Source of the DNA: Ascidiella aspersa
Lineage: Eukaryota
Direction of reading: 5' to 3'
DNA length: 64,000 nt
Assembly (NCBI GenBank): GCA_963924565.1
Contig: OZ004611.1
Coordinates: forward strand, 22,568,001-22,632,000
The notes beneath the pieces were generated by a model, which worked only from the letters and a program-made list of their open reading frames with translations, was not told the DNA's origin and did not search any database. The translations under genes and the position numbers were made by a program. Of this stretch, positions 23,165 through 46,700 are shown in pieces; positions within the stretch are counted from its first letter, which is position 1, and each line of letters begins with the position of its first letter.

Positions 23165-24823
23165 CTATCCCGATGGTGTAACAGTGACGTCGTAGTCTGG
23201 GTATCTTTTGCTTCCCATTAAAAGGACAAACTTCACGATTCCGAGGCTTTCCTGCCTATTAATTTCGCTTTGCGTGATGATGTATTGCTTGCCGGAAACC
23301 TGTCTTGCAATATTTCCACCACGAACCTGAAAATGACGATGGATTTGGGTGAATATCGAAAATAATAGGATCCAGTAACGAATGTAGACGTTTGTCAGTA
23401 AAATATTTAAAGATGGCGGTGTCTGATCAAGTTCCAAAAGCCTTGGCTAGATTAAATAAGAATAAGTCAGATAATGATCAATTATAGAAAAGGTGTGATT
23501 GAACTCTTTCGGGAAGGTGGTTAATTGTCGTTTATCTTTATTAGGTCATAGGAGAAGATGTATTTTAAATAGGGCCATTATACTCCCAAATCTATACGTC
23601 GATGTTTAATAGCTGACATGCCGACAGAGGTCCCCTAGTTCCACAACTTTTCTTGGTGGTATAAAATTATTGCTTTTAACTCTAGAAAATCGGGATTCTT
23701 TAGAGTTTAGACTTATATACTAGTTTGATTTTGATTTATTAGAATTGGGACAGTGCAGATGCAAAATATATTCCTCTTGACGTTTTATGACATGACTCGA
23801 TTTGAATTTGAAGTTATTCGCGTCAATTTGAAATTATTGTCGTAATTTACATATAAGTACAAGTTGATATTACATTTACAAAACAATTTGCCATTCCAAT
23901 AAATGAATTATGCTTTTTGTCACTTTGTCTAAAGCGATACTGTTTTTTATTTATTGATCGCAAGGCTTCTCTTCATACACAAGTGTTTCAGCTCTGTACT
24001 CGATATGTAGATGATTTGTCATAAAAATATTGAATCCATTTTAGCAACTTACGTCAATTCTTTCGACTGCGTGTGGGAATGTGACGAGAACCTTGTCCGC
24101 ACCGGTAGGGAAGTAAATCTTGCCCTGCGCAGCGTTTGGCCACGTAAAACAGAACACGACCGTCCCTTTTGGATCTGAAACAGTTGACAAAGCGTGGTTT
24201 TGAAAACACCAAAAAAGAGCCACACTGATTCTTACCTGACAGGCGAGGTGCGCATGTTCGTCTGTCATCCTTCATGAAATAGTCTTCGGGGCATTGACAA
24301 AAGGATCCTTCATTAGCATCAACACATTCGTGTGAGCACTGTAGGTTTGTGCAACCACTGGCTCCGGCTGCTGATGTTAGTACTAAAAAAAGCCAGAATT
24401 ACAATTCGTGAAGGTCAATAAAACACAAGCAGCGAATACAAGAGACGATTTAACAATAGCTCTACAGTTAAGGGTCAAACCCCTTAAAATAATCACTTAC
24501 AGTGCTCACTGCGTCCTTTTTTAGATTTTAGGCTTTGTCTCTAAAAAAATTATTTTACATTAGGCCTATAGTGTTTATATTTAGGAGAAAAACAATGTAG
24601 ATTGAATTCTCTTAAGCTTTTGCTGAAAACAAATATTTTTCTAAAGTGACTAAACAGTAACAAGATAAACGTTCGTGGAGTCTGGTAGAGCGAAGAACCT
24701 TCAAAATAGAACGGTTCTTAATTAGGCTATTGCTTATTTGTTTAGCGAGGTTTTAAACGTCGTATACCTACCGGCTTGTAAAACGGCAAGAAAAACAAGA
24801 ATAGACAGAGTTATGTGTTCCAT
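23165..24823 (-). CDS. Gene B: small secreted protein, signal peptide-EGF-CBM2-like orphan domain, 165 aa, 5 exons
   Basis: Exons 24823-24772 (MEHITLSILVFLAVLQA), 15-nt microexon 24515-24501, 24382-24236 (EGF CTNLQCSHECVDANEGSFCQCPEDYFMKDDRRTC), 24174-24053 (GTVVFCFTWPNAAQGKIYFPTG..VTFPHAVERID), 23326-23165 (VRGGNIARQVSGKQYIITQ..RYPDYDVTVTPSG*). All GT-AG, 498 nt, open frame. The CBM2 label is inference from the motif. Confidence 0.85.
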
Positions 24824-26608
24824 TTTAATGCACAGATGTGACACCAAGCATCAGTGTTTTAGGTCTGCAATTGTACAATATTTAATATACTATATAGTTC
24901 TATTTTTATGCTTAACATCCACACAAATAAATCTACAAATGCCACATTCATTAGGTCAGTCATCGATATCCAAATACTAGCACTGTTTATTAATATCTAT
25001 ATCTATGTCCTCCCTGATCCTTTTTAGTAATATATTGTTTCCGTTGAATTAAATAACTAAAATTGCAAAACATGTACCAGCATATTCGGACAGTCACATG
25101 TGATGCAATTTCACTCCAACAAATACATTACATATGTCTTCATTAATAAGTCAACCATTAGACGTTTAATGCTGTAACGCGCCATGCGCTCAAAAAAAGC
25201 AAACAACACCTATATGTATTTCATATTTGTATTGGGCAGTCTGGACACGACAAATCGATAGAAATTACCAAAGACCAGTTGTAAAATGGAACATCAAATA
25301 GGTAGAGGTTGTCGTTTTTGTGACACTTAAGAAATTGAGTGCCTAAAAATTTAAATAATATAAAACGTGCAAGAATTGCGATCTACTGATTTATTTCACG
25401 CATTTAGGATGATCTACAAACGTGAGTTTTCTATCGTTCTGGCGCCAATCAGTTTGGTAACACAGAAAAGGGGTCACCAATATTTGTACTACTCAAAGGG
25501 TAGGCTACTTGTATAGTCAAATGAATGCAATTTAATACACCCTTCTGAACTAATAACTTTGCTAAGCTTGCCTTTCGTTTTTAGCAATTTTATTGATACT
25601 TATTTTGTAAATACACTGCTACTTTCTGCAAATAAGAATATTGTTTTATGTTCACAGAAATAAATACCGTATTAAGGGCAAACGATTAGAATATTGTTTT
25701 ATATCTATACAGAACACTAGAAAAAGAGTCACTTTTAACAGGATGCGAACAAAGTTAACCGTTTAACTGAAACCCAGGCCTAATTCAAAAACCAAGTAAT
25801 TTAGTCAAGATAAATTATTTGATAGATTCAACTAAAGTATTTTTACCCAAAAACCTAATAACCTAAATTTATTTCAAATTAATACATATTTGTTAAAAAG
25901 CCAATAACGAAGTAAAACGTATTAGCTTTCTGCCAAATGCAGTTGGTCGTCTCTTTGTTTATGTCCGATATTTATTTAATGTAAGTTTTGCATATAGGCT
26001 ACACTAGGAAACAAAATAATGTTTTTAATCGCCGCCTAATTTTCCAATCTATTTTTAAACTGTCTTCCTTTGGTGATTTGCTGTGCCTTGTAAGAAAGCA
26101 ACGCGGTTTATTGTGGGTTCTATACGAAAGACAGGCATTTATTGCAAACCCATTTGGTAACCTTATACACTTGCGTCTAATTTCCAACCATTGCATTTTT
26201 AGTAAAATATGTCACATAGAAGCCTTTTATAGATTCAGTCAACTGTGTGAAATCAATAACAACCCGAATGACGATGGCCGCAATTATTTTATTTGTGGGA
26301 ATTTGATAATCTCCAACACCAAACGTAAAAGCCGGACTTTCACACCGAAGAAAGTACGTTTAAAACGAAAGGTGTACAGAAAGGCAGATATCGTAAAACT
26401 AAACATTCACCGGCAAAAAATAACAATACATCAACACCGCACCAAGCTTTTTGGCCCTTTCGTGACCAACAAGAAAACACATGTCTACATAATCAAAACT
26501 GGGTCAAGTGTAATAGTGAAAAAAATCTCCGTGCATTTAATTAAGTGACTAGCTAGGTGACTGAAAGGTCGTCCAGGGTGACATTTTACTGCGATCGAAC
26601 GCTTAGAG

Positions 26609-26906
26609 CAGTGGTTCTCAACCTTTTTTCTTTCGTGGCCCATTTTCGTTGCACAAAAATTCTGGGCCCAATAAACTGTTAGGGAAGAACAAACTATAAA
26701 ATAGGTTTAGAACAAAAAAGAGCGGAGCATGTATCAATAAATTTACGTTTTATTTACATTTCTTCAATTCCTCCCCAATCAAATTATTCCTGTAAAATTA
26801 CGTATAGTGACACAAACCAAAGTAAATTCTTCAATAAATCTAGCTTTTTTAAATTGGTCTGTGGCCCACCTAAAATTTTCCATGGCCTACGGGTTGAGAA
26901 CCGCTG
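26609..26906. mobile_element. hAT-type MITE just downstream of the gene C stop codon
   Basis: CAGTGGTTCTCAACC ... GGTTGAGAACCGCTG, perfect TSD gcttagag; empty paralogous site at ~43751. Confidence 0.9.
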
Positions 26907-26916
26907 GCTTAGAGCC

Positions 26917-29900
26917 TTAGACGGTTGGTTCGGTGTATGGTACAACAGACACTTGGTAGTCTGGGAATCGGTTCATCGACATGTCGATGACAAACTCTGC
27001 CTGACCATTGCCGGTCTGACGTTCAATGTCGTTTTGCGTAAAGGTGTACTGGCTGCTGGACACCTTCTTGGAAACGGAGCCGAACCAGACCTGCAAAAAG
27101 TTAAAATGATTGTTATATTGTTGCACCGATTTTATCGTTTGTGTGTGCGTTATTGTTTATCAGCTTTATCGTTCGTACGCGTGTATTCGTTTTCCTCTTT
27201 CTTTCTCACTCACGTAAATTTTATCGCTTTTCCACTTTTGCACCTCACCTTTCACGCTTTATTTCTTATCTTATCACGTTTCCATTGGCACCTAATAATT
27301 AGTTTTTACTGTCGCTTATGTTAACACAATTAAACGACAGCCAATGAAGACGTTAAGAAACATTTATTAATGACATGTCTCGACCATGATTTTTTGTTTG
27401 ATATAAGTGACGGCGCAAGTAGCCTGTACGAACTATCGTCTAGCGCTATAATTCAACTTGCTTTAGCGGCCAACGGCGAAAAATGTGGTGCTGATAAACG
27501 TTACCGTTATTGGAAAGGTGTCAAATGGTTAAAGAAAGCATAAGGGAATACGTCTATAGTTTGCAAACCCTTGGCGAACAAGCTTACCCAGACGGCGGCG
27601 ACAAGCCTATAAAAAATGAGGTTATGTATCTGGCTCTACTGCGCGGCTTGAGCTACAGAACACTCGCCACTGCAATTAGTAAGGACGCTTCAATAAAGCG
27701 CGACTTTACTAAAGCCGCGAAGATGGCTGTCCACGCAAGCATTGCGTGCCAGCCCTCACATAATGTAGGTCACATTAGCAATAATGCTACGACGGAGAGG
27801 GTTGCTGCCGGCCCCGTCTTTTCAGCTTTCCGAATGGAATTCCAACGCCAAATGGGGGATTTTATGGAAACGATCGACCATCTGCGACAAGAGGTAGCCG
27901 ACCTTCGCTCCGACCAATACCAACCACTGGACCGGAACTCCAGCAGGTTTGACCTTGGTGATTTACCTAAACAGTCTATCGTACAAATCGCATCTGGCCA
28001 AAGGCCTCATTCCTTTGTTAATATTATGACCGAAAACCTGCCAGTGTACGCCCGCCCTTGTTAATACGGGTTCAGCAGTTACCATCATTACGAGAAAAGT
28101 GTGGAACTGTTTGAAGGCTAAAGTTAAATGTAAACTGTCGAAGTGTCCCGAAACCCTGTCATTTGCCAACGCTGACGGCCACAAACTAAATATGGATGGT
28201 TTACTTCCAGTACAACTTACATGAGCTGCTAAGAGTTTAATATGAATGTTTTTGTTTGCGATTCTATTTTATTCGATTGCATTCTCGGTATAGATTTCCT
28301 AGAAACGCAGGAGTGCGCCGTTTGTTACCGTAACAAGATCTTGAAGACCGACAACAGCAGCGCACCTCTACTCGATATGCCATTCAACATGGGAAGCTTT
28401 CTAGAAGATAAAGTCCTGATCCCACCGTCCACAGAGGTTTGTGTTCCAGCCTATTTTATAGTTCTGAACGTCGCCCAGTACATATCCATTCTGTACTTAT
28501 TAAAGGAAAACCCGAGAAAATTGCTAAATATGGTGCAATGGTCGGGTCATATTTAACGACAACTGAAGGCTGTTTAGTCCATGGTGGAATAGCCAATTTG
28601 ACCGACGACGCAATCGAGCTGCCTGAAGGCACTCGGATTGCCACACTTTCACCCATTCTTATTTCCGGGGATGTTGCATGTATTCGAAGTGGTACTTGTG
28701 TCACAGTCGAGTCGTCAACACAACCATGTTATTGTAATGACCAGAGATGCGTGGCCTTTTCGTGTCCTACCCAACAGAGCGTCAGCTCCGTATACCCAAC
28801 TGAAGAAAACCTGGCGCACCTTTCAGGAGCATATGGAGCGATTGGAGGGCGTGATACAACGACTTGCCGACGCGGGCCTGACACTCAAGCCCCAGAAGTT
28901 CGCATGGTCGGACGAGTGTCAGACAAGCTTTGCCAAACTAAAATCGTCTTTGATAAGATCACCAGTTCTTCGCTACCCTGATTTCCAGAAGCCTTTCTTA
29001 TTAGACACCGACGCGTCTGAATTTGCTATTGGATGCGTGTTAGCGCAGTGGCACGAGGGAAAAGAACACGTAATAGCCAATGGCAGCAGAACTTCAACTA
29101 AAACAGAACGAAATTATTCTACCACTCGCAAAGAATTAATAGCGGTCGTTCATGCCACCAAGTTATTTCGCTGCTACCTGCTAGGCCAAGCATTCACTTT
29201 GCGCACTGACCACGCTTCTCTTAAGTGGCTATATCAGTCCAAGGACCTCTATGACCAGTGTGCCCCATCGGTCGAGCAACTGTCGCAATACGATTTTAAT
29301 CTAGTACATCGTCCTGGTGTCAAAAATAAAAATGCAGACGCTCTTAGTCGAATAGGGGAAGACCAGTTAACCGATGCGCCGAAAATTGCCACTATCGATG
29401 TTCGTGCCTCTAGTGGTTTGACAATGGGTGAGATTGCACAAACACAGGAGCAAGACCCAGAAATAGCTCCAGCTTTTCAATGGTTAAGCTAAGGACACAG
29501 ACCCCCATACAACGCTGTGTCAAATACATCACGTAAGACCAGGCACTTATGGAGTCACATGGCCAATTGAACTTAGAAACGGGGTCATTCATTTCTACGA
29601 CCAGGATAAAACACTTTTAAGACTTGTAACTCCGCGTGAAATAAGGCCCCAAATCTTCGATTTACTTCACGATGCAAAGCTAGGCGGTGGTCATCTTGGT
29701 ATTCGTAAAACATGCGCCAAGGTCGCTGAACGACACTTCTGGCCAGGCTGGCGCGAGGAGACTGAGCGGTATTGCATGGAATGTCGTGAGTGCGAGTTGA
29801 ACAAGAAACCCTCAAAAACACCAAAAGCCCCTTGGTACCATCTTGAGAAGAAGGTCCTTTAGAAAGGGTAGAAGTGGACATCATGGGGCCGTTACCTTTA

Positions 29901-32900
29901 ACACTCCACGGGTCCTTGTTGCTTGTAATGTGTTTACTAAATATGTCCGAGCTTGGCCCTTTCGTACACAAACAGCAACCGAAACCGCCAGCGAATTGTT
30001 CAACCGCTGGATGACAGTTCACGGAGTTCCCGACATCATCCATTCAGATCGTGGCGGGAATTTTAAAAGCAAGATGTTTAAGGAGTTGCTTCAGCTGATG
30101 GGTTGCGGTAAGTCACGCACGACTAGTTAGCATCCCGCCTGCAACGGAGGTGTTGAACGAAACAACAGGACGATAGTTTCGATGATTCGAAATTACGTTC
30201 AAAAAGATGAACACTCCTGGGATGAAGCACTGTTTGCTGTTGTCGCGTCGTATAATGCGAGTACCCACAAAGTACGGGATTTTCACCACATTTCTTGTTA
30301 ACAGGTCGACAATTGCGGCTACCTGCGGACTTGGTTGGAGCAGGGTCCGAAGAGTCGCATTTCCTAAACGACAACATCAAGAGCCTTTACGACCGACTTG
30401 TTCGTACCGAAGATCTTGTTCGGACTACCCTCGTCAAGCAGCGACAGCAAATGGAGGCGCATTTCAACAGAAACGCAGATGACACCGCATTTAACGTTGG
30501 CGACTCGGTTTTACTAAGGGATAACGTAGTCCCTGTAGGGTCAAACCGAAAATTTCATTTTCCCTATGCAGGCCGGCAAGTGCGACCACCGGCAAAGTAT
30601 TTGATAGAAGCGGCCAACGGACGACAACAGAACGTCCATCGAAACCGTTTGAAGCGCAGCCGTGTAAATTACACACAACAAAATCAACAGGAGGAAGACG
30701 AAGAATAGACCTGAAGAACAAACATCGAAGCACCCAACCGACATCGGATTTCGCCTCACCATGACTACAACGCCACGTTCACCTGAAACACAACCACAAC
30801 CAACGACTGAATGCACCAACCAACAACTCGCGAGTGACGTGAATCACAGCACAAGCCCCGGTCTGATGCCCGATGGCACCAGCGTTGTTTCCACCAGACC
30901 GAGGCGTTCAAGAAAAACGACACGCTTTTACCCCAACATGGAGACCTTCCATCAACATTGTTGCCTTCTCACTCACGTAAATTATATCGTTATTCCACTT
31001 TTGCACCTCACCTTTCACGGTTTATTCCTTATATTATCACGTTTTCCGTTGGCACCTAATAATTAGTTACGTTTGACAAACACACACCTTTTTTCTCTCG
31101 TTGTAGTGATTGACGTTCCCGAAAACAAATGGGGGCAGTCGCGTTTTGGGGATAAGTAGAAACCCTGGGAATTTACGTTGTTGTCACTTTTTAGGCGTTG
31201 GCAGCTTTTCGTTGTTTTAGTGTTTTAGTATTTTACTGTCGCTTATTTTAATACAATTAAAAGACACGCGTTGTAGCGCTTGGCAGTCGACAGGCCGTTA
31301 AGTAGAGCTCTGGAATAGTTTGGCGTAACAATAACACGCGGATTTTCGAAGGTTGGGCAATGTCCGACCGAGTTGACATAAATTATAGACATACATTATA
31401 AATATTTTTTCGACTCTTTTCTTGGTGAAGACAATGTTTCACGTTTTAGACGATCATTTTACAGGCTGCGATCATAACTGAAGCCAAAGGTAAACGAAAT
31501 ACTCACATTGATGCTCTTGATTGATTGTGGGAAGGTTACAGTGACGGCATTGACACCAGTCGGGAAGTACAACTTTCCTTGTGCGCCGTTGTGCCAGGTT
31601 CGACTGAACACTACGAAGCCTTCAGAGCGAGCTGCAAGTAACAAGAAATGGGTTTAATCTTGTGCGAGTCTTAAGCTTGCAATTGGAAAATAGAAAAGCC
31701 CGACAAAGTGTTTGCCAACAATATATAGGTACAGACCCGATTCCTATTTCATACAGATATTTGATTTATTAGCAAAGCGATTTGCACGAGAGCCCGCATA
31801 TATTTTTCTACAGTGATGTAACGCTTAACCAAAGACCCAAAAAAGTTTTCTTTAGGTACAAAATCGACATTTTACCTTTTCAATGGTTGTTTTTATCACT
31901 TCTCACCCTCACCAGAGCCGTTTAACAAATTTATAAAATAACCAAGTAATAAGGTCAATTAAAAGATTTGAGCATAATGTTTGGGGGTTGCAATAGGACG
32001 TAATAAGAACATCAAATCCCATATAGAAGTAAGTAGCCTTATGTAAATGTTTTAAATAAATCTTAAGATAACGGCTAGGGGTTGTAGGTAGTTAGATGTA
32101 GAACAAACATCAAAGCCCATACATAAGTATCATTTTGAACGTTTCGAATAACTTTTTATTCATTTTCAACATTACAAAGACGAAATCGAACTCACGAATT
32201 TCGCAGATGGCCATCCTGCTGTTTGCGCACGAGCTGGTGTAGAGCATGTTATCAATGTAGCCGCAGTCTCCTGCTCCTGGCTGTTCAGGTGCCCAGCCGG
32301 CGGTGTAGGTGAACACGGTACCGTCGGAGTTGTCGAAAACACCCTCCTCGGCGCGATCGGACAGACCTGGGGTGTGCAAAAGAGTAACGTGCAGGCCCAA
32401 TGATATTGCCAAAAGTAGTTTGGTCGCAGAATTATGCCGTTGCCTCAATTATTCACGGATTAATTATAGTTAACTGTTTGACAAACTTCGCAAAATAGTT
32501 CGACGAAAATGCCCTCATTATCGCGATCAGTCAAACCTGTTGTGTGCAAAAGATTGACGTCAGGCCCATGGATATCGCCAAAAGTCGTTTCGCCTCAGAA
32601 TTATGTCGTGGCCTTAATCTCGGGCGGATTACTCAGTTAACTGTTTGACAAACTTTGCAAAATGATTTGTTTTGTGGTTCGTTTTGTTAGGCCCTTTTTC
32701 GACTGTTTGCAATTTTATGACCACAAACGAACAGCCATTCAGTTATTACGTTAATGGGAAAGCACACCCACATCAAACTATACCTTAAAACTCTAGTCGA
32801 CGAGCCTTTAGGTTCCCACTTCGAAAAAGCTAGACAAGGAAAACTAATAGAGTTAGCTCCACCAGGCAACATACAATAGATAGAAATCGCTCTTCTGGTC

Positions 32901-34260
32901 TATAGCGATTTCTATCTAAGGAAAACTAATATGTCCATCTTTGCGGCCATTACAAACCTTAAAACGCAAAAACTGCCGAAACGTGTAATCGCTTTCTTAC
33001 CGATCCATTTTTCGCCTCCGTAGTTACTCGCGACGATATTCCTGACTCCACCGTCTTGGACAACAACCAGACGGCCTCCGTTGACGACACAATCAACCTC
33101 AGCCTCCTCGTAAGAGCTCGGTTCGTTGGTGGCGTGCATGCAGCTGTGTCCGTACGCCATGTATCCCGCCGGGCAATCGGCAACTGAGTGGAAAAAAAGT
33201 GGGATTTAACACCTTTATTGCTGATTTTAATCGTTGTTGCGTTACCCAATCCTGACGTTTTTACGTCGTTTTCAGTTCCATCTTATTTTTTTCAAATGTT
33301 TGTGCAGCTTTTGCCATTTAAGCAAAGCCTAAATATTTTATTACAAACAAAGTGCATTTGTAACTTTGGTTTGGTAACCTCGAGTTTAAATTAATTGAAT
33401 GCGGTTACACTGAACTTTAGTAATGAGTTTACTATTGTTGCTGGTCAGTAAGACTTGAGACTGATTAGATCTTCCGTTAATTCTTTAGACTGCATGTGGG
33501 AATGCAACAAGAATGAACACCGTTAGGGAATTAAGCTCTATATACCCTGCGCACCGTTTTTTTTGGTCACGTTAAACAGATCACTGCCACCCATTTGGGA
33601 TCTGAAACAGTTGACAAAGCATGTTTACGAAAACACCAAAAAAGAGCCACACTGATTCTTACCTGACGGTCGTTTAACGCATGTTTGTCTGTCATCCGTC
33701 AGGAAATAATCTTCGGGGCATTGACAAAAGGGTCCTTCACTAGTGTCAACACAATCGTGCGAGCAGTTGAAATTCATGCAACCGCTGGCTTCGGCGGCCG
33801 ATGTTAGTACCGAAAAAAAGGGACAGAATTCAAATTAGGTCACCAAAACATATAGGCAGCGAATACAAGAAGCGATATAACAAAAGCTCTGATTAAAGTA
33901 GATGGCCTGTAAACATCTGAAAACAACCACTTACAGTGCGCACTGCGTCATTTTGTTTTTTTTTATGCTTCGCCATTAATAATTTTATTTTACAGTAATG
34001 CTGTTTATATTTAGGAGAAAAACAATGTTGATTGAATTACATTAAGCTTTTACTGTAAACATGTTTTTCACAAAAGTGACTAAACAGTAACAAGATAAAA
34101 GTTAGTGGCGCCTGGTAGAACGAAGAACTTTCATAATATAACGGTTCTTAATTAGGCTATTGCCTAAATTGTTTAGCAAGGTTTCAAGCGTCGTATACCT
34201 ACCGGCTTGTGAAACGGCTAGAAAAACAAGAATAGACAGAGTACTGGTAATGTGTTTCAT
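26917..34260 (-). CDS. Gene C (putative chimeric gene): signal peptide-C-type lectin fold-CBM2-like domain, 236 aa, 5 exons
   Basis: Exon 34260-34203 (MKHITSTLSILVFLAVSQA, copy of B exon 1, phase-1 donor intact) is phase compatible with 33183-33001 and 32366-32196 (CTL: [14 protein letters not shown]...GGRL..WIGLSD..W...QPGAGDC..C....AICE), then 31631-31507 and 27090-26917 (copies of D's last two exons). Total 711 nt, no stops, splice sites intact. Expression is unknown. Confidence 0.6.
27111..31336 (+). mobile_element. Degenerate Ty3/Gypsy LTR retrotransposon in the last intron of gene C, antisense to the host
   Basis: gag-like ORF 27510-28064; protease remnant ALVNTGSAVTII (~28054-28090); RT largely deleted; RNase H LDTDASEFAIGCVL..RNYSTTRKEL..TDHASL (28638-29492); integrase remnants (VEVDIMGPLP, IHSDRGGNF) with stops and frameshifts; order RH before IN. 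Terminal direct repeats ~27200-27340 and ~30966-31270; TGTTAT...ATAACA ends. Absent from the paralogous intron of D. No clear TSD, so boundaries are approximate. Confidence 0.9.
33476..33949 (-). pseudogene. Inactivated B-derived exons inside gene C (microexon, EGF exon, first CBM-like exon)
   Basis: Microexon 33949-33935 acceptor AG>AT; EGF exon 33809-33663 acceptor AG>GG; exon 33601-33476 has the conserved Trp TGG>TGA (33567-33569), frameshifts and donor GTAAG>GGAAG, all relative to gene B. Confidence 0.85.
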
Positions 34261-34770
34261 TTTTATGAACATGTGTTACACCAAGCGTCAGTGTTTTACG
34301 TCTGCAATTGTACAATATTTAATATAATGTATATAGTTCTATTTCCATGCTTAACTTCCACACAAATAAATCTACAAATGCCACATTCATTAGGTCAGTC
34401 ATCGATATCTAATGCCTGCTCTGTTTTTTAATATTTATCCCTGATCCTATTTAGTAATATCTATTTTCGTCGAATTGAATAACTAAAATTGCGAAACACG
34501 AGCCAGCATACTCGGACAGGCACCTGTGGTGCAATTTATTTACAACAAATAAATTACATATGTCTTCCTTAATAAGTCAGCCATTAGACGTTTAATGCTT
34601 AAACCTGTTATGCGCTCAACAAAAGTAAACAACACTTTGTGTATTTCATATTCGTTTTGGGCATTCTGGACACGACGAATTGATAGAAATTACCAACGAC
34701 TGGTTGTAAAGACGGACATTAATTCGGCAAAGTGTCATCGTGCCATGGGACTCTGTACCTCTGTCTTGAG

Positions 34771-35440
34771 CAGGGGCGGCAACATACGGCCCTCGACGGG
34801 ATTTTGAGCGGCCTGCACACAGTTTTCGGTTGAGGCCCGCGGCCACATTCTGCCACAAATAATAGTGATTGCTAGTTATTCTTTAGGTTCTTTGTTTTGT
34901 GTTAACATAAATATTTAGAATTTACAATATATACTTCCCATGGATTTGCTAAGAAACGTAAGTTTGACGAAGAGTGTCGCGAATTTAACAAGGATTGGAT
35001 GAAAAAAAAAACTTTTTCACTCAAGTCGTCAATAATCAGAATTTTCGTTCGAATGACAAACTCTGCCTGAATCCGAATGGTGAAAACAAACGATTATGGT
35101 TGCACATCAATCATAAAGAATGTTTGGATGTTATAAGATGAATATATGTCGCTACTAAATACATGATTAGTATTGATGCTTTTAGGAACGAAATATTGTT
35201 ATCTTATAACATTCAAACATACTGATTTTTGGTTTACCAAGTTCTGTACTTAGTTTGTTTTTACGTCGGGAAGAAAGCAGTATGTTTGATGTGCAATAAA
35301 AGTGTTGCCGTGTTTAAATAGTACAACTTTAGCCGCAATTATGCGCCAAAACATGCAGGCTTTGGCAGTACCTAATCCGGCCCGCCAGTACTTTATTTTG
35401 CCTTATTTGGCCCGCCGACCGGAAAAGTTGCCCGCCCCTG
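34771..35440 (+). mobile_element. Internally deleted Buster/SPIN-like hAT element with transposase N-terminal remnant
   Basis: TIRs CAGGGGCGGCAAC / GTTGCCCGCCCCTG, perfect TSD gtcttgag; translates to KKRKFDEECREFNKDW..FFTQV (~34950-35030) and VGKKAVCLMCNKSVAVFK*YNFSRNYAPKH (~35265-35355), typical of the SPIN/GTF2IRD2-type BED-finger region. Confidence 0.8.
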
Positions 35441-36404
35441 GTCTTGAGGTATTTGCCAAACGACATTCCTGTTATATTCTATTTATCGCCTTCTTGTCTT
35501 GTCTGCTTCTATGCTCTGTATCTACTGTCTTCGTAAAAACCAAAACTGACCTTCTCTGGTCTAACTTGCTTCCCCCCAACTCGACCTTATGCGATGGAAT
35601 AAACTATTTAAGCTAACAGTACACCCTGTAATCGGCAATATTCGTCATGATATGCCCTGCATAATGACTTAAGACGAGATCTGAACACGCTGAACGCAAC
35701 TGGAAACATCAATAAAACAACATATGTACAAAAAGCTTGTATTTTTGGATTCAAGATCACAATAAAATACTTTTAACCAGGGCTGCGGAGTCGGTTAAAA
35801 ATAACCCGAGTCCGACTCCGGTCAAAAAAATAAACCCGAGTCCGACTCCGGTCAAATGAGCGATTTTGTCGAGTCCCGAGTCCGGCCTGCATTTCACCAA
35901 TTTACGTAACTAGAATAACGTGGATATTCAGCAATCCACTTATAGGGGTGTCGTATAATTCATTCACTCAAAATACATGGTTGGAAAATATTCTACCAAA
36001 TGCTATTTCGCATTTACAATTTCCATTTGGCGGCCGTTTCAGTTTTTAAATTTGGTACTGCGCATGTGCATTTCGGACTCGGGACTCGGGTAGCTTTGCA
36101 ACGTCTTACTCGAGTTCAGACTCCCGAGTCCGACTCCGGCAAAAACAAACCGACTCCTCGAGTCCCGAGTCTAAGCCCATCTTAATGGTGTGTAATTTGT
36201 AATCTTACTAATTGTATATCCTTATCTTTTTTTATTTTACTTTTTGTCTGACAAAAAGTTAGAATAGCCACGCAAGACTCTTAAATCAAGGAATATTTTA
36301 GTGCTAAGCAACAACCACTTGTGTGTTATTACTTTGCCACGTTTAAAACGAGTTGAGTATTCTATTTTCTAGTGGCCTGCTTGATGTTTTTTCTTACTTT
36401 AGCC

Positions 36405-37284
36405 CAGGGTTTTTCAACCGTGGCGCTCGGCCCCCCTGGGGGGCCACGGAGCGGTCATTGGGGGACCACGGGCAACTCTCTAGCTAGGTAGGTTTGCAAA
36501 ACCAAACTGCCACCTTTTTGAATTTGCCAGTTGATAACTGAATCCTTACTTAACGTTTTCTAACACTTGTTTCTGGCAGGTTCTTTGACTCATCAGTAAC
36601 GATGTAGAATGTTGGATAATTTCTTTGTTCGTTTTATTGCGGAAAGTTACGCCTAAGAGTACGCACGCGAGTGGCAAGTTTGAATAAAGGCCCGTCGCTG
36701 TGGCGAAACGATTACTGTGCTGCTTTATAAGCAGCCAAATAGTGCGGGGTCAGCGTTTCTTTGGACGCCCAATTACTTGAATCATCAAGTGTCTGTCAAA
36801 AGCTGCTAGGCGAGAAAATAATGTGCGTAATGTCGGGTGCAGAGATCTGGCAATTTCCTTAAAGTGCGTTATGTTGCAAAAGAAACTTTCCAGGGTATAT
36901 AACGCACCAAGTACGCTGCAGGGTTACTCAAAGTTAATTTTAGGCCAAAATTTAGTGGATTTTGCACAGCGTATTTGTCAAGTAATAGTAATGCATTCAC
37001 AAAACAAAAATCGGGCAATTATCTCGACAAATGTAGTCACATTTAACACAAAAAACCTTGGCGGAGTTTAAGAACAAGCTTGTACTGACTAACTACGTTA
37101 TAATTTAAATTAAAATGACTGATTTGTTAATTTGTTTAAAGCAAGTGCATTTATTCGTTGATTAATGGATTTGTTATTAACGTAAAGAAGTGAAACAAGT
37201 GAAAATAGTAAATTTTTGCAGGGGGGGCACCAGGATCGAGAGCCTTAAAAAGGGGCCACGAAGCAAAAAGTTTGAGAACCACTG
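36405..37284. mobile_element. hAT-type non-autonomous element (copy 1 within the 2.6-kb duplication)
   Basis: CAGGGTTTTTCAAC ... TTTGAGAACCACTG, TSD ctttagcc/ctttaacc. Confidence 0.75.
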
Positions 37285-38949
37285 CTTTAACCAAGGGCAA
37301 AACCAGCTGACGAAGGAGATTTATCCCAGAATAATAACTCCTCGTAAACAGAATGTATTTTTTGTATATTGCGTTTACCTGCACAAGGCAATAACGCCCT
37401 GTCAGCAGAAACGTGTATCGCGTTTACCTGCACAAGGCAATAACGCCCTGTCAGCAGAAACGTGTTTATGCTTTAAATGTTCTAGGGCCTGGAAACCGCT
37501 ATATACGTTGAGACTTGGTCGTGTGCAAAGCGAACCACTTGCGTGATATTATTTGTCACATTTAAAACGAGTTGAGTATTCTGGTTTCTGGTAGCCTGCT
37601 TGTTGTTTTATTTTACTTCAGCCCAGTGGTTGTCAAAACATTTTTAGCTTGCATCACACTAAAAAAAGCTTATTATTCGCGGTGCACTTTTAACAAAACA
37701 ACAATATGGTAACTTTACAAATCGTTTCGCTACTAAATACATGATTAGTATTGATGCTTTTAGGAACGAAATATTGTTATCTTATAACATTCAAACATAC
37801 TGATTTTTGGTTTACCAAGTTCTGTACTTAGTTTGTTTTTACGTCGGGGAGAAAGCAGTATGTTTGATGTGCAATAAAAGTGTTGCCGTGTTTAAATAGT
37901 ACAACTTTAGCCGAAATTATGCGCCAAAACATGCAGGCTTTGGCAGTACCTAATCCGGCCCGCCAAGTACTTTATTTTGCCTTATCTGGCCCGCCGACCG
38001 GAAAAGTTGCCCGCCCCTGGTCTTGAGGTATCTGCCAAACGACATTCCTGTTATATTCTATTTATTGCCTTCTTGTCTTGTCTGCTTATATGCTCTGTAT
38101 CTACTGTCTTCGTAAAAACCAAAACTGACCTTCTCTGGTCTAATTTGCTTCCCCCAACTCGACCTTATGCGATGGAATAAACTATTTAAGCTAACAGTAC
38201 ACCCTGTAATCGGCAATATTCGTCATGATATGCCCTGCATAATGACTTAATACAAGATCTGAACACGCTGAACGCAACTGGAAACATCAATAAAACAACA
38301 TATGTACAAAAAACTTGTATTTTTTGGATTCAAGATCACAATAAAATACTTTTAACCAGGGCTGCGGAGTCGGTTAAAAATAACCCGAGTCCGACTCCGG
38401 TCAAATGAGCGATTTTGTCGAGTCCCGAGTCCGGCCTGCATTTCATCAATTTACGTAACTAGAATAACGTGGATATTCGGCAATCCACTTATAGGGGTGT
38501 CGTATAATTCATTCAAAATGCATGGTTGGAAAATATTCCACCAAATGCTATTTCGCCTTTACAATTTCCATTTGGCGGCCGTTTCAGTTTTAAAATTTGG
38601 TACTGCGCATGTGCATTTCGGACTCGGGACTCGGGTAGTTTTGCAACGTCTTACTCGAGTTCAGACTCCCGAGTCCGACTCCGGCAAAAACAAACCGACT
38701 CCTCGAGTCCCGAGTCTAAGCCCATCTTAATGGTGTGTAATTTGTAATCTTACTAATTGTATATCCTTATCTTTTTTTATTTTACTTTTTGTCTGACAAA
38801 AAGTTAGAATAGCCACGCAAGACTCTTAAATCAAGGAATATTTTAGTGCTAAGCAACAACCACTTGTGTGTTATTACTTTGCCACGTTTAAAACGAGTTG
38901 AGTATTCTATTTTCTAGTGGCCTGCTTGATGTTTTTTCTTACTTTAGCC

Positions 38950-39810
38950 CAGGGTTTTTCAACCGTGGCGCTCGGCCCCCCTGGGGGGCCACGGAGCGGT
39001 CATTGGGGGACCACGGGCAACTCTCTAGCTAGGTAGGTTTGCAAAACCAAACTGCCACCTTTTTCAATTTGCCAGTTGATAGCTGAATCCTTACTTAACG
39101 TTTTCTAACACTTGTTTCTGGCAGGTTCTTTGACTCATCAGTAAAGATGTTTAAAGTAGAATGTTGGATAATTTCTTTGTTCGTTTTATTGCGGAAAGTT
39201 ACGCCTAAGAGTACGCACGCGAGTGGCAAGTTTGAATAAAGGCCCGTCGCTGTGGCGAAACGATTACTGTGCTGCTTTATAAGCAGCCAAATAGTGCGGG
39301 GTCAGCGTTTCTTTGGACGCCCGAATACTTAAATCATCAAGTGTCTGTCAAAAGCTGCTAGGCGAGAAAATAATGTGCGTAATGTCGGGTGCAGAGATCT
39401 GGCAATTTCCTTAAAGTGCGTTAAGTTGTAACGCACAAAGTACGCTGCAGGGTTCAAAGTTAATTTTAGGCCCAAATTTAGTGGATTTTGCACAGCGTAT
39501 TTGTCAAGTAATAGTAATGCATTCACAAAACAAAAATCGGGCAATTATCTCGACAAATGTAGTCACATTTAACACAAAAAACCTTGGCGGAGTTTAAGAA
39601 CAAGCTTGTACTGACTAACTACGTTATAATTTAAATTAAAATGACTGATTTGTTAATTTGTTTAAAGCAAGTGCATTTATTCGTTGATTAATGGATTTGT
39701 TATTAACGTAAAGAAGTGAAACAAGTGAAAATAGTAAATTTTTGCAGGGGGGGCACCAGGATCGAGAGCCTTAAAAAGGGGCCACGAAGCAAAAAGTTTG
39801 AGAACCACTG
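38950..39810. mobile_element. hAT-type non-autonomous element (copy 2 within the 2.6-kb duplication)
   Basis: Same ends and TSD as 36405-37284. Confidence 0.75.
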
Positions 39811-39892
39811 CTTTAACCATGGGCAAAACCAGCTGACGAAGAAGATTTATCCCAGAATAATAACTCCTCGTAAACAGAATGTATTTTTTGTA

Positions 39893-40088
39893 TATTGCGT
39901 TTACCTGCACAAGGCAATAACGCCCTGTCAGCAGAAACGTGTATCGCGTTTACCTGCACAAGGCAATAACGCCCTGTCAGCAGAAACGTGTATCGCGTTT
40001 ACCTGCACAAGGCAATAACGCCCTGTCAGCAGAAACGTGTATCGCGTTTACCTGCACAAGGCAATAACGCCCTGTCAGCAGAAACGTG
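39893..40088. repeat. 49-bp minisatellite, 4 copies
   Basis: Unit TATCGCGTTTACCTGCACAAGGCAATAACGCCCTGTCAGCAGAAACGTG; 2 copies at ~37367-37464 and 1 at ~40623-40670. Confidence 0.9.
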
Positions 40089-43752: not shown

Positions 43753-46700
43753 TTAGACGGTTGGTTCGGTGTATGGTACAACCGACACTTGGTAGTCTGG
43801 GAATCGGTTCATCGACATGTCGATGACAAACTCTGCCTGGCCATTGCTGGACTGACGTTCAATGTCGTTTTGCGTAATGGTGTACTGGCTGCTGGACACC
43901 TTGGAAACGGAGCCGAACCAGACCTGCGAAAAGAGAAAAGGGTTTTATACCACGCTGCTTTCGTCGGACTACGTGAGTTATTGCTAATGCCAGATCGATT
44001 TGGCATAAATTAGATGGGCATTAAAATCGATTTTTCGACTCTTTTCTTGGTAAAGTTATTGTTTCGGGTTTTAGACGTTCCTTTGACAGGGGGTGCGATC
44101 ACAACTGAAGGCGAGTTGCTGTTAAAGAGCTATTTGGAGGAAAGCGTAAACAAAATACTCACATTGATGTTCTTGATTGCTTGTGGGAAGGTTACAGTGA
44201 CGGCATTGACACCAGTCGGGAAGTACAACTTTCCTTGTGCGCCGTTGGGCCAGGTTCGACTGAACACTACGAAGCCTTCAGAGCGAGCTGCAAGTAACAA
44301 GAAATGGTTTTAATTTTCTGCAAATCTTAAACTTGCAATTGAAAATTAGAAAAGCCCGACAAAGTGTTTGCCAACAATATATAGGTACGACCAGAGTGAT
44401 ATCGGTACAGACCCGATGAACCCGCATACATTTTTCTACAGTGATGAAACGCTTAGCCCAAGACCCAAAAGAGTTTTTAGCCCCAAATCGACGTTTTACT
44501 TTTTCAGCGGTTGTTTTTATCACTTCCCACCCTCACCAGAGCCGTTTAACAAATTTACAAAACAATCAAGTAATAAGGTCAATTAAAAGATGGGAGCATA
44601 ATGGTTGGAGGTTGGAATAAGACGTAATACGAATATCAAAGCCCACACATAAGTATATAAGTATCATTTTGAGGGTTTTGAATAACTCTTTATTCATTTT
44701 CATTTTTTTGCATTCAATTAAAAGACGAATTTGAACTCACGAATTTCGCAGATGGCCATCCTGCTGCTTGCGCACGAGCTGGTGTAGAGCATGTAGTCAA
44801 GGTAGCCGCAGTCTCCTGCTCCTGGCTGATCATCTGCCCAGCCGGCGGTGTAGGTGAAAGCGGAACCGTCGGAGTTGACGAAAACACCCTCCTCGGCGCG
44901 ATCGGTCAGACCTGGGGTGTGAAAAAGAGAAACGTGTCAGACCCAGTGATATTTTTTTCAATTATTGACGGATTACTTATAGTTAACTGTTGGACAAACT
45001 TTGCAAAATAGTTCTCGTTTTTTTTTGTCCGTTGATACCCGTTTTGGCGTTTTGTGGTTCGCTTTATTTGACCTTTTTTGCGACTGTTTTTGCATTTTTA
45101 TGACCACGAACGGCTATTCAGTTGTTACGTTCATAGGAAAGCGAACGCACATCCAAATACCTTAAACTCTAGTCGCCTTTACTTCAAAAATGCTTAACCA
45201 GCGAAGCTAATATGCCCGTCTTGGCGGCCATTACAAACTCGAAAACGCGAAACGCAGCCGAAGCGTGTTATCTCTCATTCTTACCGATCCATTTGTCGCC
45301 TCCGTAGTTGCGCGAGACGATCTTCCTGACTCCATCGTCTTGGACAATAACGAGACGGCCTCCGTTGACGCCACAAGCTCCTTCAGCCTCGTCGTAAGAG
45401 CTCGATTCGTTGGTGGCGCGCATGCAGCTGTGTCCGTACGCCATGTATCCGGCCATGCAGTCGGCAACTGAATAGAAAATAGCGGGATATGGTTAAGAGT
45501 TTAATGGCTACCTTTACTTTTGGTGCATCACTCGAACGCTTCGTTTTTAAGTCTTTTTTAGTTTCATCCCTTTTTTTAGTTTTTGTGCAGCTTTCGCCAT
45601 TTAGACAAATGTTAATAATTTTATTGCTTTCATAACCTTGGTGCGGCAAACTTTAAGTTGAATTAATTGATGTGGCTGCACTGAACTTTAGTAATAGGTT
45701 AACTGTTATCGCTGGTCAGTAAGACTAGACTCGGTTTAGATCGAATATGCATGCCTTATGTGTGTGATGACTGAGTCCAGCTTAGCAACCTGTGATTTGT
45801 TAAGGTAAAATCGAGAATGAATTGATACCAGGGAAAACCGTATAGGCAAGACTTCCAAAAATGGGAGGTACTTATCACTAACGCGTGTTTTGGCAGTTTG
45901 AATCTTACCGGCGGCTCTTGGCAGACAGGTGACGCTATCGACATCCATGTAGTGGTCTTCTGGGCATTCACAGAAGAAAGAGGACTCGATGTTCACGCAG
46001 CTGTGCGAGCATGGGCTGTTGTCACACTCGTTGGTGTCTGTTGCAAGGAAATAAATGACAATTTAAAACGGGTGTCGCGACTTTTGCTTGATTTGCTCGC
46101 GAACAAACGCCGTTTCTATGAGTCTATTTTCCTTTCAAGGAGTCTCGATGGAATTAAGAAGAAGGTAAGGAATTAAGAGGCAAGGCGGAAAACGTGTAGT
46201 TCATAAAGATTGCTTCTTACAGATTCGTGAAGATACTTTCATAAAGATTCTATAGCGTTTTACGAACGTTTGAGATATATTCTGTTGGGCAGTAAAATGT
46301 GATCCAAAACTGTTCAAATGCCATGCCAACCTAACAGTAAGCATACAACTAAATGAAGGATCCTTATATTTTATCGACGGCCACATGAATTTTTTAAACC
46401 CGGTTTTAGCTAGCGTAGGCTTACCGAAGCAGGTCATGTTGTCGGGTCCGAGAGTGTATCCGATTGAGCATTCGCAAATGAAGCCTTCCAAGGTGTCCAA
46501 GCAGATGTCGCTGCAGCCACCGTTGTTCATGGCACACTCGTCGACGGCTGCCTTGGTCACGTTGTTACCTGTGGAAGCAACAAAGGTCAAAACCGGCGAC
46601 AGGCAGGGTTAAATTAGTTCTACGAGTTTTTATCAAGCTCTGACATGCATATATACGGCCAACTGCAAGAGTGTGAAAACTGAGTCTTTGTATTCACTTA

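What the first reader, a model, noticed from the sequence alone, without database searches (positions are those of the whole stretch)
26917..34260. Birth of a chimeric gene: duplication joins B's signal-peptide exon to D's lectin and CBM exons, and the intervening exons lose splice sites
Seen: a tandem duplication with breakpoints at B's fourth donor (~24048) and in a D intron (~45742) creates a junction at ~33471 with only ~1 nt of microhomology. All three B-derived internal exons have lost a splice site (AG>AT at 33950, AG>GG at ~33811, GT>GG at ~33474), and one also has a stop and frameshifts. Exon 1 and the four D-derived exons keep open frames and canonical sites. Exon 1 (phase 1) joins the CTL exon (phase 1) in frame to give a 236-aa signal peptide-CTL-CBM protein found in neither parent. 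Inference: this asymmetric decay suggests a functional new gene under B's promoter rather than uniform pseudogenisation.
Basis: partly seen in the sequence, partly recalled or inferred. Interest (0 to 1): 0.82.

Follow-up and report, generated by a model that had tools for sequence, protein, structure and literature searches.

The report
Expressed chimeric lectin gene from tandem duplication

Summary
The tandem duplication is real: unit 24048-33471 matches unit 33471-45742 at about 78-93% identity. DNA contigs from three public runs bridge its junction. On the minus strand it joins the 5' part of gene B (signal peptide, EGF, X domain) to the 3' part of gene D (C-type lectin-like domain plus X domain).

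RNA reads show canonical GT..AG joints 34203>33788 (48 reads), 33663>33183 (18 reads, the chimeric join) and 32196>31631 (23 reads). The predicted joint 34203>33183 was not listed.

So the B-derived EGF exon is not lost. Its AG>GG acceptor is replaced by an in-frame AG 24 nt downstream. Only the B-derived X exon (33601-33476) is dead and skipped: donor GT>GG, a TGA and three indels.

The supported product is a 278-aa protein (signal peptide, EGF, CTLD, X), not 236 aa. Its frame is open in the window.

Selection is unproven. dN/dS against D is 0.85, and synonymous divergence (0.07) is far below intron divergence (about 0.2). Mosaic haplotypes point to gene conversion with D. Expressed exons nevertheless lack frameshifting indels.

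This is a new member of a known kind, of moderate interest.

The parts
34261..34710 (-). B-type 5' flank (promoter copy) of the chimeric gene
   Evidence: 448 aligned nt against B's flank give K=0.137, lower than the introns. RNA depth is 11.5 in bin 34250-34365 and 0 upstream, so there is no read-through from D.
34203..34260 (-). Exon 1: ATG and signal peptide (MKHITSTLSILVFLAVSQA), 58 nt, ends in phase 1
   Evidence: Sequence. The donor G|GTAGGT is used in 48 RNA reads. It has a 6-nt in-frame insertion relative to B.
33810..33812 (-). Site of B's EGF-exon acceptor, mutated from TAG to CGG
   Evidence: Alignment. B's own transcripts use the intact TAG|TACTAAC: 13 loose-end reads, agreement 0.94.
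33663..33788 (-). EGF exon, 126 nt, phase 1-1, entered through a replacement acceptor GAAG|CC 24 nt downstream of the lost one
   Evidence: Joints 34203>33788 (48 reads) and 33663>33183 (18 reads), both GT..AG on the minus strand. Pfam EGF scores 22.9 bits against a cut-off of 21.5. All six Cys are kept; dN/dS against B is 0.36.
33476..33601 (-). Dead B-derived X-domain exon: donor GT>GG, TGA at 33569-33567, three indels; skipped in the mRNA
   Evidence: RNA depth is about 0 (bin 33554-33669 = 1.4, accounted for by the end of the EGF exon). A 5-nt indel at 33557 is polymorphic in runs X2 and X3.
33468..33474 (.). Duplication junction: B-type sequence above it, D-type intron below it
   Evidence: Self-BLAST blocks meet at 33471. 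Contigs X1 33137-33641, X2 33141-33641 and X3 33158-33619 bridge it.
33001..33183 (-). CTLD exon 1 (D-derived), 183 nt, phase 1-1
   Evidence: Acceptor used in 18 RNA reads. An X3 contig carries chimera-specific letters (GATTGCCCGGC) at the join. K=0.118 against D.
32504..32663 (-). Local duplicate of the 5' part of CTLD exon 2 plus upstream intron; a pseudo-exon that is not expressed
   Evidence: 78.5% identical to 32334-32496. RNA depth is 0.
32196..32366 (-). CTLD exon 2 (D-derived), 171 nt, phase 1-1
   Evidence: Donor used in joint 32196>31631 (23 reads). The 5' half is barely covered at 95% likeness in X2, X3 and X4. The X3 loose end at the CTLD1 donor continues with the D-like start of this exon.
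31507..31631 (-). X-domain exon 1 (D-derived), 125 nt
   Evidence: Joint 32196>31631. 52 reads leave at the donor. About 57% of reads carry the chimera letters at 31514, 31524 and 31592; the rest carry D letters.
27118..31358 (+). Degenerate LTR retrotransposon remnant in the last intron, antisense to the gene and absent from D
   Evidence: RT_RNaseH_2 4.9e-34, Integrase_H2C2 1.9e-17, rve 3.6e-8 in broken frames. Repeat pairs 27203-27304/30966-31068 (92%) and 27299-27339/31225-31266 (90%).
26917..27090 (-). X-domain exon 2 with stop codon TAA at 26919-26917
   Evidence: Open frame and canonical acceptor. 95% identical to D's last exon. These are the only two copies in the genome. The RNA join across the retroelement was seen only as loose ends.
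23165..24823 (-). Parent gene B: signal peptide, EGF, X domain; four exons, about 160 aa
   Evidence: Coordinates. B-type reads splice exon 1 to the EGF exon.
43753..45467 (-). Parent gene D, 3' cassette: CTLD exons 1-2 and X exons 1-2. The gene continues upstream with EGF, VWA and Ly6-like exons to beyond 51434
   Evidence: Homologues P0008, P0010 and P0011 have VWA-EGF-CTLD-X architecture.

Best explanation
Origin (inferred from the layout of the two units): two neighbouring genes on the minus strand were caught in a tandem duplication. They are the large extracellular gene D (EGF repeats, VWA, EGF, CTLD, X domain) and the small gene B (signal peptide, EGF, X domain). The end points lay in D's intron before the CTLD exons and at the donor of B's first X exon. 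The copy at the junction therefore carries B's promoter, signal-peptide exon and EGF exon, followed by D's CTLD and X exons.

Why the frame holds (shown): the EGF exon and both CTLD exons are phase 1-1, so the pieces join in frame.

Later changes (shown in sequence):
- The leftover B-type X exon lost its donor (GT>GG) and decayed.
- The EGF exon lost its original acceptor but is entered through an in-frame AG 24 nt downstream, at the cost of 8 codons.
- A Ty3/gypsy-type element inserted into the last intron.

Transcript (shown by RNA): exon 1, then the EGF exon, then CTLD exon 1, with the dead exon skipped; and CTLD exon 2, then X exon 1.

Product (inferred): the six-exon model is an open 837-nt frame encoding a 278-aa secreted protein, a signal-peptide-led miniature of D's C-terminal cassette under B's regulation.

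Still inferred, not shown: that the protein is made and that selection maintains it.
For: - Duplication structure.
- Junction bridged in three runs, and chimeric mRNA joints in two studies. X4 raw reads give 48, 18 and 23 joint reads, all with the first mate on +, which in most stranded libraries means a minus-strand RNA. X3 contigs carry chimera-specific letters on both sides of 33663>33183.
- No RNA upstream of about 34366, so this is not read-through from D.
- No other genomic copy of these exons exists that could supply the reads.
- Open 278-aa frame with canonical sites at all used exons.
- Indels: 1 in-frame event in 650 exon nt, against 34 events in 1836 aligned non-coding nt. At the non-coding rate, leaving out an unalignable flank, about 12 are expected; P about 7e-5.
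- Inside the B-derived part, the included EGF exon has no indel and keeps all six Cys, while the skipped exon of equal length has three indels and a stop.
- Indel polymorphisms in four runs fall only in introns and the dead exon (table 4).
- Roughly 57% of reads over X exon 1 carry the chimera's letters, so expression is comparable to D's.
Against: - dN/dS against D is 0.85 (30 nonsynonymous, 10 synonymous changes). This gives no sign of protein-level constraint in the D-derived part.
- Synonymous divergence is 0.07 (0.03 in the X exons), against intron K of 0.18-0.23. Mosaic haplotypes exist: the X2 contig 31525-31732 is D-like at seven intron sites but chimera-like in the exon, and X1 is D-like at 31592. 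Gene conversion with an intact D could therefore keep the frame open without selection on the chimera.
- The 5' half of CTLD exon 2 is nearly uncovered at 95% likeness, and no 33001>32366 joint was listed.
- The join to the last exon was seen only as loose ends. Beyond the shared first 20 letters, their letters 21-30 fit neither genomic copy exactly: 3 mismatches to D, 7 to the chimera.
- Only about 6% of one RNA run was read, and the tissue is unknown.
- No protein evidence.
Confidence: 0.66

Rival explanations
1. Transcribed but selectively neutral relic. The junction copy is still driven by a working B-type promoter and still spliced. Its open frame survives only through occasional gene conversion from D, the modular phase 1-1 exons and chance. 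It is on its way to pseudogenisation.
For: - dN/dS is 0.85 against D.
- dS is far below intron K.
- Mosaic D/chimera haplotypes exist.
- With distant outgroups, polarised amino-acid changes are 13 chimera-derived, 9 D-derived and 7 ambiguous, so the chimera is if anything slightly faster.
- A retroelement, a local exon-fragment duplication and a roughly 308-nt insertion right after the stop have accumulated in the locus.
Against: - The EGF exon shows no sign of recent conversion (K 0.23 against B). It is nevertheless indel-free, keeps all six Cys and has dN/dS 0.36, while the neighbouring skipped exon of the same origin is wrecked.
- A replacement acceptor that happens to be in frame is used in essentially all transcripts.
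- Expression is on a par with D.
- No disruptive variant was seen in expressed exons in four runs.
Confidence: 0.28
2. One reading: all B-derived internal exons are skipped, and exon 1 joins CTLD exon 1 directly (34203>33183) to give a 236-aa SP-CTL-CBM protein as the main product.
For: The join is arithmetically in frame: 58+183+171+125+174 = 711 nt. The original EGF acceptor is indeed mutated.
Against: No such joint reached the 3-read listing threshold, while 48 reads join 34203>33788 and 18 join 33663>33183. The EGF exon has depth 46.5, similar to exon 1.
Confidence: 0.04
3. Assembly artefact or mis-mapped reads: the duplication is a collapsed or expanded haplotype, and the RNA comes from B and D.
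For: Reads from D do map onto X exon 1, with about 43% D letters. Reads from B map onto the end of exon 1, 13 of 65.
Against: - The copies differ by 7-25%, far beyond an assembly duplication.
- The junction is bridged by contigs of three runs.
- The joint 33663>33183 links B-type to D-type sequence with chimera-specific letters on both sides.
- The genome holds no third copy.
Confidence: 0.01

Closest known systems
[quoted passage not shown] 2017, PMC5460883)
   Same: One duplication unites the 5' end and promoter of one gene with the 3' end of its neighbour, while both parents stay intact at the flanks. The chimera is expressed. That survey counted 76 such chimeras in 15 lines.
   Different: - This case is old (intron K about 0.2), not a young segregating variant.
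- It is in a tunicate.
- It shows secondary remodelling: one exon killed and skipped, and one acceptor replaced in frame.
- The two parents already shared EGF and X modules.
Sdic of Drosophila melanogaster, a chimera of AnnX and Cdic formed after a tandem duplication (from my own knowledge, not checked in a paper here)
   Same: A fusion of adjacent genes after duplication, with loss of intervening exons and sequence.
   Different: Sdic acquired a new promoter and first exon from intronic sequence and was then amplified. Here B's own promoter and signal-peptide exon are reused and there is one copy.
Exon shuffling of phase 1-1 extracellular modules (Patthy's rule; established knowledge)
   Same: The EGF exon (126 nt) and the CTLD exons (183 and 171 nt) are all symmetric phase 1-1.
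   Different: No new module combination arises. The order EGF-CTLD-X is already D's C-terminal cassette.
Tunicate and marine VWA-EGF-CTLD-X proteins (P0008, P0010, P0011; Ciona savignyi H2Y970)
   Same: The chimera's CTLD and X exons are paralogues of the C-terminal cassette of this family.
   Different: The chimera lacks the EGF array, the Ly6-like domain and the VWA domain. The copies in this genome have lost the Cys pair (WFC ... G.CEF) that is conserved in the X domain of the other members.

Membership tests
Chimeric gene born by tandem duplication across two genes | Two tandem units whose end points lie inside two different genes of the same orientation | tested here: met
   Units 24048-33471 and 33471-45742. 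The end points are B's X-exon donor and D's intron 45908-45468.
Chimeric gene born by tandem duplication across two genes | Both parental genes remain whole at the flanks | tested here: met
   The exons of B and of D's 3' cassette are open with canonical sites. B-type and D-type reads are present in RNA. D's 5' part was not modelled in full.
Chimeric gene born by tandem duplication across two genes | A transcript that crosses the junction and joins exons of both parents | tested here: met
   Joint 33663>33183: 18 reads in X4, plus X3 contigs.
Chimeric gene born by tandem duplication across two genes | Open reading frame through the join | tested here: met
   837 nt, 278 aa, no stop.
Chimeric gene born by tandem duplication across two genes | Maintained by selection (a functional new gene) | tested here: inconclusive
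   For: the indel deficit, and EGF dN/dS of 0.36. Against: dN/dS of 0.85 in the CTLD and X exons, with signs of gene conversion.
C-type lectin-like domain (Pfam PF00059) | Match to the family profile above its cut-off | tested here: inconclusive
   The two exon halves match profile positions 2-51 (13.5 bits) and 45-106 (18.3 bits), in order. Each is below the 22.6-bit cut-off. Homologue P0005 passes with 36.2 bits. The joined domain was not scanned.
C-type lectin-like domain (Pfam PF00059) | Ca2+/sugar-binding motifs (EPN or QPD, and WND) | tested here: not met
   The sequence reads [12 protein letters not shown] and LYTSSC where those motifs would sit. This supports a CTLD fold, but lectin activity is not implied.
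EGF-like domain | Six-cysteine pattern and profile match | tested here: met
   Pfam EGF scores 22.9 bits against a cut-off of 21.5; FXa_inhibition scores 31.6, below its 33.4 cut-off. Six Cys are present.
   No Pfam hit on either X exon, or on P0005, P0015 or P0009, even at E up to 10. The X2 profile finds no PDB sequence at E up to 10.
   In the model of homologue P0005, residues 102-194 have pLDDT of about 75-90. Best matches are CBM2 modules: 2xbd Z 8.3, rmsd 2.8, 83 of 87 residues aligned; also 6f7e, 3ndy, 1exg, 2rtt and 5dhe. Foldseek gives probability 0.94-1.0 but E 0.02-0.2. Z of about 8 is the tool's stated grey zone. The window's own spliced domain was not folded.
   Two invariant Trp (W115 and W146 of P0005) are candidates only.
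Ty3/gypsy LTR retrotransposon (the intron insert) | RNase H followed by integrase on one strand, flanked by direct repeats | tested here: met
   RT_RNaseH_2, Integrase_H2C2 and rve occur in that order on the + strand. The frames are broken and the RT core was not found. Flanking repeats are about 92% alike.

The most novel reading that the evidence does not exclude
The chimera is a selectively kept, secreted protein that places a CTLD next to a CBM2-like polysaccharide-binding module. The X domain would then be an undescribed family, seen so far only in tunicates and in unnamed marine-sample proteins, that tethers extracellular proteins to tunic cellulose in the only animals that make cellulose. 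The locus would show how such tunic or immune proteins diversify by duplication, exon death and gene conversion.
Probability: 0.12. Interest if true: 0.7.

Novelty: new member of a known kind. Interest (0 to 1): 0.4.

Why it matters
The locus documents every step of gene birth by tandem duplication in one place: the two end points, the mRNA across the junction, an acceptor replaced in frame, a leftover exon silenced by donor loss, later transposon insertion, and continuing gene conversion with a parent. Such complete cases outside Drosophila and mammals are few.

It also shows why sequence-only splice predictions need RNA. A mutated AG did not remove the exon.

The side lead may be of wider interest than the chimera itself: a CBM2-like C-terminal domain in tunicate extracellular proteins.

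Tried and rejected
- Pfam on single exons gave no family for the X exons.
- The ESM Atlas search on X exon 2 returned only bacterial Plug-domain clusters at 0.88-0.90, with recognition below the useful level. I treat this as noise.
- The word search with X exon 2 was blank. It only sees proteins of 31-100 aa, so it says little.
- The PDB sequence search with the X2 profile was blank.
- A third paralogue as the source of the RNA reads is rejected. The genome holds only the chimera, B and D for these exons, plus four distant X-domain genes on contig C1 at 58% protein identity.
- Read-through from D is rejected: there is no RNA between 34366 and 34800.
- The last-exon join could not be settled. 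The loose-end consensus has D's length but differs from D at 3 letters and from the window's chimera at 7.
- Polarising changes with distant outgroups gave no clear asymmetry: 13 chimera-derived, 9 D-derived, 7 ambiguous.
- The joined 278-aa model was built only inside scripts, for frame and substitution counts. All searches used single exons by reference or database homologues.
Full report
**1. The duplication**

A self-comparison of the window shows that 33471-34710 matches 24048-25285 (81% over 1269 columns). It also shows that 26019-33471 matches 42812-45742 in blocks of 77-93%. The layout is that of a tandem duplication with units 24048-33471 and 33471-45742.

Each unit has since gained its own insertions:
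- Unit 1 gained a 4.2-kb retroelement remnant.
- Unit 2 gained about 8 kb that includes two 2.5-kb repeats.

The copies differ far too much to be an assembly duplication. Contigs of three public runs cross the junction (X1 33137-33641, X2 33141-33641, X3 33158-33619). With about 20% divergence around the junction, the claimed 1 nt of microhomology cannot be assessed.

**2. The parents**

All genes lie on the minus strand.

- Gene B has four exons:
  - Exon 1, 24823-24772, encodes the signal peptide.
  - The EGF exon is 24382-24236.
  - X exon 1 is 24174-24053.
  - X exon 2 is 23326-23165.
- Gene D is a large extracellular gene. Its 3' cassette is CTLD exons 45467-45285 and 44911-44741, then X exons 44287-44163 and 43923-43753. 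Upstream are EGF, VWA and Ly6-like exons.
- The D end point (about 45742) lies in the intron 45908-45468, before the CTLD exons.
- The B end point lies at the donor of B's first X exon.
- B's EGF is 50% identical to D's last EGF, and B's X domain is a paralogue of D's. B may therefore be an older partial derivative of D.

**3. Sequence changes in the junction copy**

- AT instead of AG at 33951/33950.
- GG instead of AG at 33811/33810.
- GG instead of GT at 33475/33474.

The B-derived X exon (33601-33476) also has a TGA at 33569-33567 and three indels (+5, +4, -5) relative to B. Exon 1 and the four D-derived exons are open and have canonical sites.

**4. RNA**

One stranded RNA run (X4) was laid on 31350-34800. 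About 6% of its raw reads were read. A second study's run (X3) behaves like RNA: exon-only depth in the thousands and spliced contigs.

Joints found, all GT..AG on the minus strand:
- 34203>33788: 48 reads.
- 33663>33183: 18 reads.
- 32196>31631: 23 reads.

What these show:
- The EGF exon is included. It is entered at an AG (33790/33789) 24 nt downstream of the mutated acceptor and in the same frame.
- The EGF exon is then joined directly to D-type CTLD exon 1. This is the chimeric junction. X3 contigs carry chimera-specific letters on both sides of it.
- The dead X exon has essentially no coverage, so the surviving acceptor at 33603/33602 is not used.
- No 34203>33183 joint reached the listing threshold.
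- Thirteen reads with B's letters in exon 1 continue into B's EGF exon at TAG|TACTAAC.
- Coverage stops upstream of about 34366, so the transcript starts at the B-type 5' end and is not read-through from D.
- Over X exon 1, the three sites that tell the copies apart show about 57% chimera letters and 43% D letters. The two genes are therefore expressed at similar levels in that sample.

**5. Gaps in the RNA picture**

- The 5' half of CTLD exon 2 (bin 32278-32393) is almost uncovered at 95% likeness in X4 and X3. It also has depth 0 in the DNA-like run X2.
- An X3 contig leaves CTLD exon 1 at its donor and continues with the start of exon 2 carrying D's letter. The haplotypes sampled there seem to differ from the window by more than 5%, or to be D-like.
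- 52 reads leave X exon 1 at its donor. They continue into the 20 letters shared by the two genomic copies of the last exon. The next ten letters fit neither copy exactly.
- The join across the retroelement is therefore likely but not shown.

**6. The product**

The exons are 34260-34203, 33788-33663, 33183-33001, 32366-32196, 31631-31507 and 27090-26917. They make an open 837-nt frame of 278 aa: signal peptide, EGF, CTLD, X.

The EGF exon and both CTLD exons are phase 1-1. The domain order equals D's own C-terminal cassette, so the product is best described as a signal-peptide-led mini-D under B's promoter.

**7. Selection or conversion**

Evidence on substitutions:

| Region compared | K | dN/dS |
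|---|---|---|
| CTLD exon 1 vs D | 0.118 | – |
| CTLD exon 2 vs D | 0.074 | – |
| X exon 1 vs D | 0.024 | – |
| X exon 2 vs D | 0.030 | – |
| Alignable introns vs D | 0.18-0.23 | – |
| All D-derived exons vs D | dS 0.07 | 0.85 (30 nonsynonymous, 10 synonymous) |
| EGF exon vs B | 0.23 | 0.36 |

Both site classes are low together in the D-derived exons. That pattern fits ectopic gene conversion better than protein-level constraint.

Direct support for conversion comes from mosaic haplotypes:
- An X2 contig carries D's letters at all seven diagnostic intron sites 31659-31690 but the chimera's letters in the exon.
- X1 has D's letter at 31592 only.
- Other individuals carry D-like letters at 33167 and 32222.

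Evidence for constraint:
- The six-fold contrast in indels is hard to get without it: 1 in-frame event in 650 exon nt against 34 in 1836 non-coding nt.
- The EGF exon shows no recent conversion, yet it has no indel and keeps all six Cys. The equally long skipped exon beside it is wrecked.

Polarising the CTLD and X amino-acid differences with distant homologues gives 13 chimera-derived, 9 D-derived and 7 ambiguous changes. I conclude that expression and coding capacity are shown, and that maintenance by selection is plausible but open.

**8. Domains and host**

- The CTLD halves match Pfam Lectin_C in the right order but below the cut-off when taken singly. The EPN/QPD and WND motifs are absent.
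- The X domain has no Pfam family.
- A profile of X exon 2 from six genomic copies found only 13 proteins among 1.84 billion representatives.
- Where those hits are long enough to judge, X is the C-terminal domain of VWA-EGF-CTLD-X proteins.
- The only named hit is from Ciona savignyi.
- The genome carries a GT2 domain and a GH6-like domain 2.8 kb apart on one strand. That is the hallmark of the tunicate cellulose synthase (established knowledge). The host is therefore a tunicate.
- A model of homologue P0005 has a confident beta-rich X part. Its best solved matches are CBM2 modules: 2xbd Z 8.3, with 83 of 87 residues aligned, and several more.

**9. Comparison with what is known**

Chimeric genes formed when a tandem duplication does not respect gene boundaries are well documented and often expressed (PMC5460883). 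This locus is a new, older and unusually complete example in a tunicate. It adds in-frame acceptor replacement and the death of one exon. It is not a new mechanism.

**10. Limits**

- One read-laying run, one RNA run read in part, tissue unknown.
- Only single exons by reference and database homologues were used.

Noticed in passing
window 31507-31631 and 26917-27090; homologue P0005 residues 102-194: The C-terminal X domain has no Pfam family. It finds only 13 relatives among 1.84 billion representatives; the one named hit is from Ciona savignyi. Its predicted fold is closest to bacterial CBM2 cellulose/xylan/chitin-binding modules (Z 8.3). This is intriguing in a cellulose-making animal.
   Followed up: partly
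G000:C5:19610502-19611038 and 19613851-19614090: A GT2 (Glyco_trans_2_3, 62.9 bits) match and a GH6-like (28.1 bits) match lie 2.8 kb apart on the same strand. This is the tunicate cellulose-synthase arrangement and identifies the host as a tunicate.
   Followed up: partly
window 31514-31690, 32222, 33167: Mosaic haplotypes in other individuals. D-type letters appear at runs of diagnostic sites of the chimera (seven intron sites 31659-31690 in X2), flanked by chimera letters. This indicates ongoing ectopic gene conversion between the chimera and D.
   Followed up: partly
window 32334-32496 and 32504-32663: A local duplication of about 165 nt (78.5% identity) copies the 5' part of CTLD exon 2 and its upstream intron. 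The upstream copy is not expressed. Run X1 holds a second haplotype in which 32392-32444 is replaced by D-like letters.
   Followed up: partly
window about 31956-32172: A high-copy interspersed repeat sits in the intron after CTLD exon 2. Depth in the DNA runs rises to about 1e5, the genome search gave 2069 first-look candidates, and both strands appear in RNA.
   Followed up: no
window 35149-40287: Two adjacent copies of about 2.5 kb, 98-100% identical, lie between D's 3' end and the chimera's 5' end. They are absent from unit 1. They contain a 49-nt x 4 minisatellite at 39893-40089 and no long ORF.
   Followed up: no
window 26608-26915: An insertion of about 308 nt follows directly after the chimera's stop codon, relative to D. 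Its lower edge (26603-26646) matches 37248-37290 and 39774-39816 in inverted orientation. The chimera's 3' UTR therefore differs from D's.
   Followed up: no
G000:C1:29447210-29476748 (L015-L018, L023-L026): Four tandem genes carry the same two-exon X domain, 58% identical to the chimera's. With B, D and the chimera they make the whole family in this genome, seven places in all.
   Followed up: partly
window 23165-24823 (gene B): B (signal peptide, EGF, X) looks like an older derivative of D's last EGF plus X without the CTLD exons. Its EGF is 50% identical to D's last EGF. The locus may therefore have produced partial copies more than once.
   Followed up: partly
window 31505 loose end (RNA run X4): The 52 reads leaving X exon 1 continue with ...TCCAGGCAGTCCAG. 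This differs from both genomic copies of the last exon: D has AAGGTG there and the chimera has AAGAAGGTG. It is probably an allele in a variable loop, but it is unexplained.
   Followed up: partly
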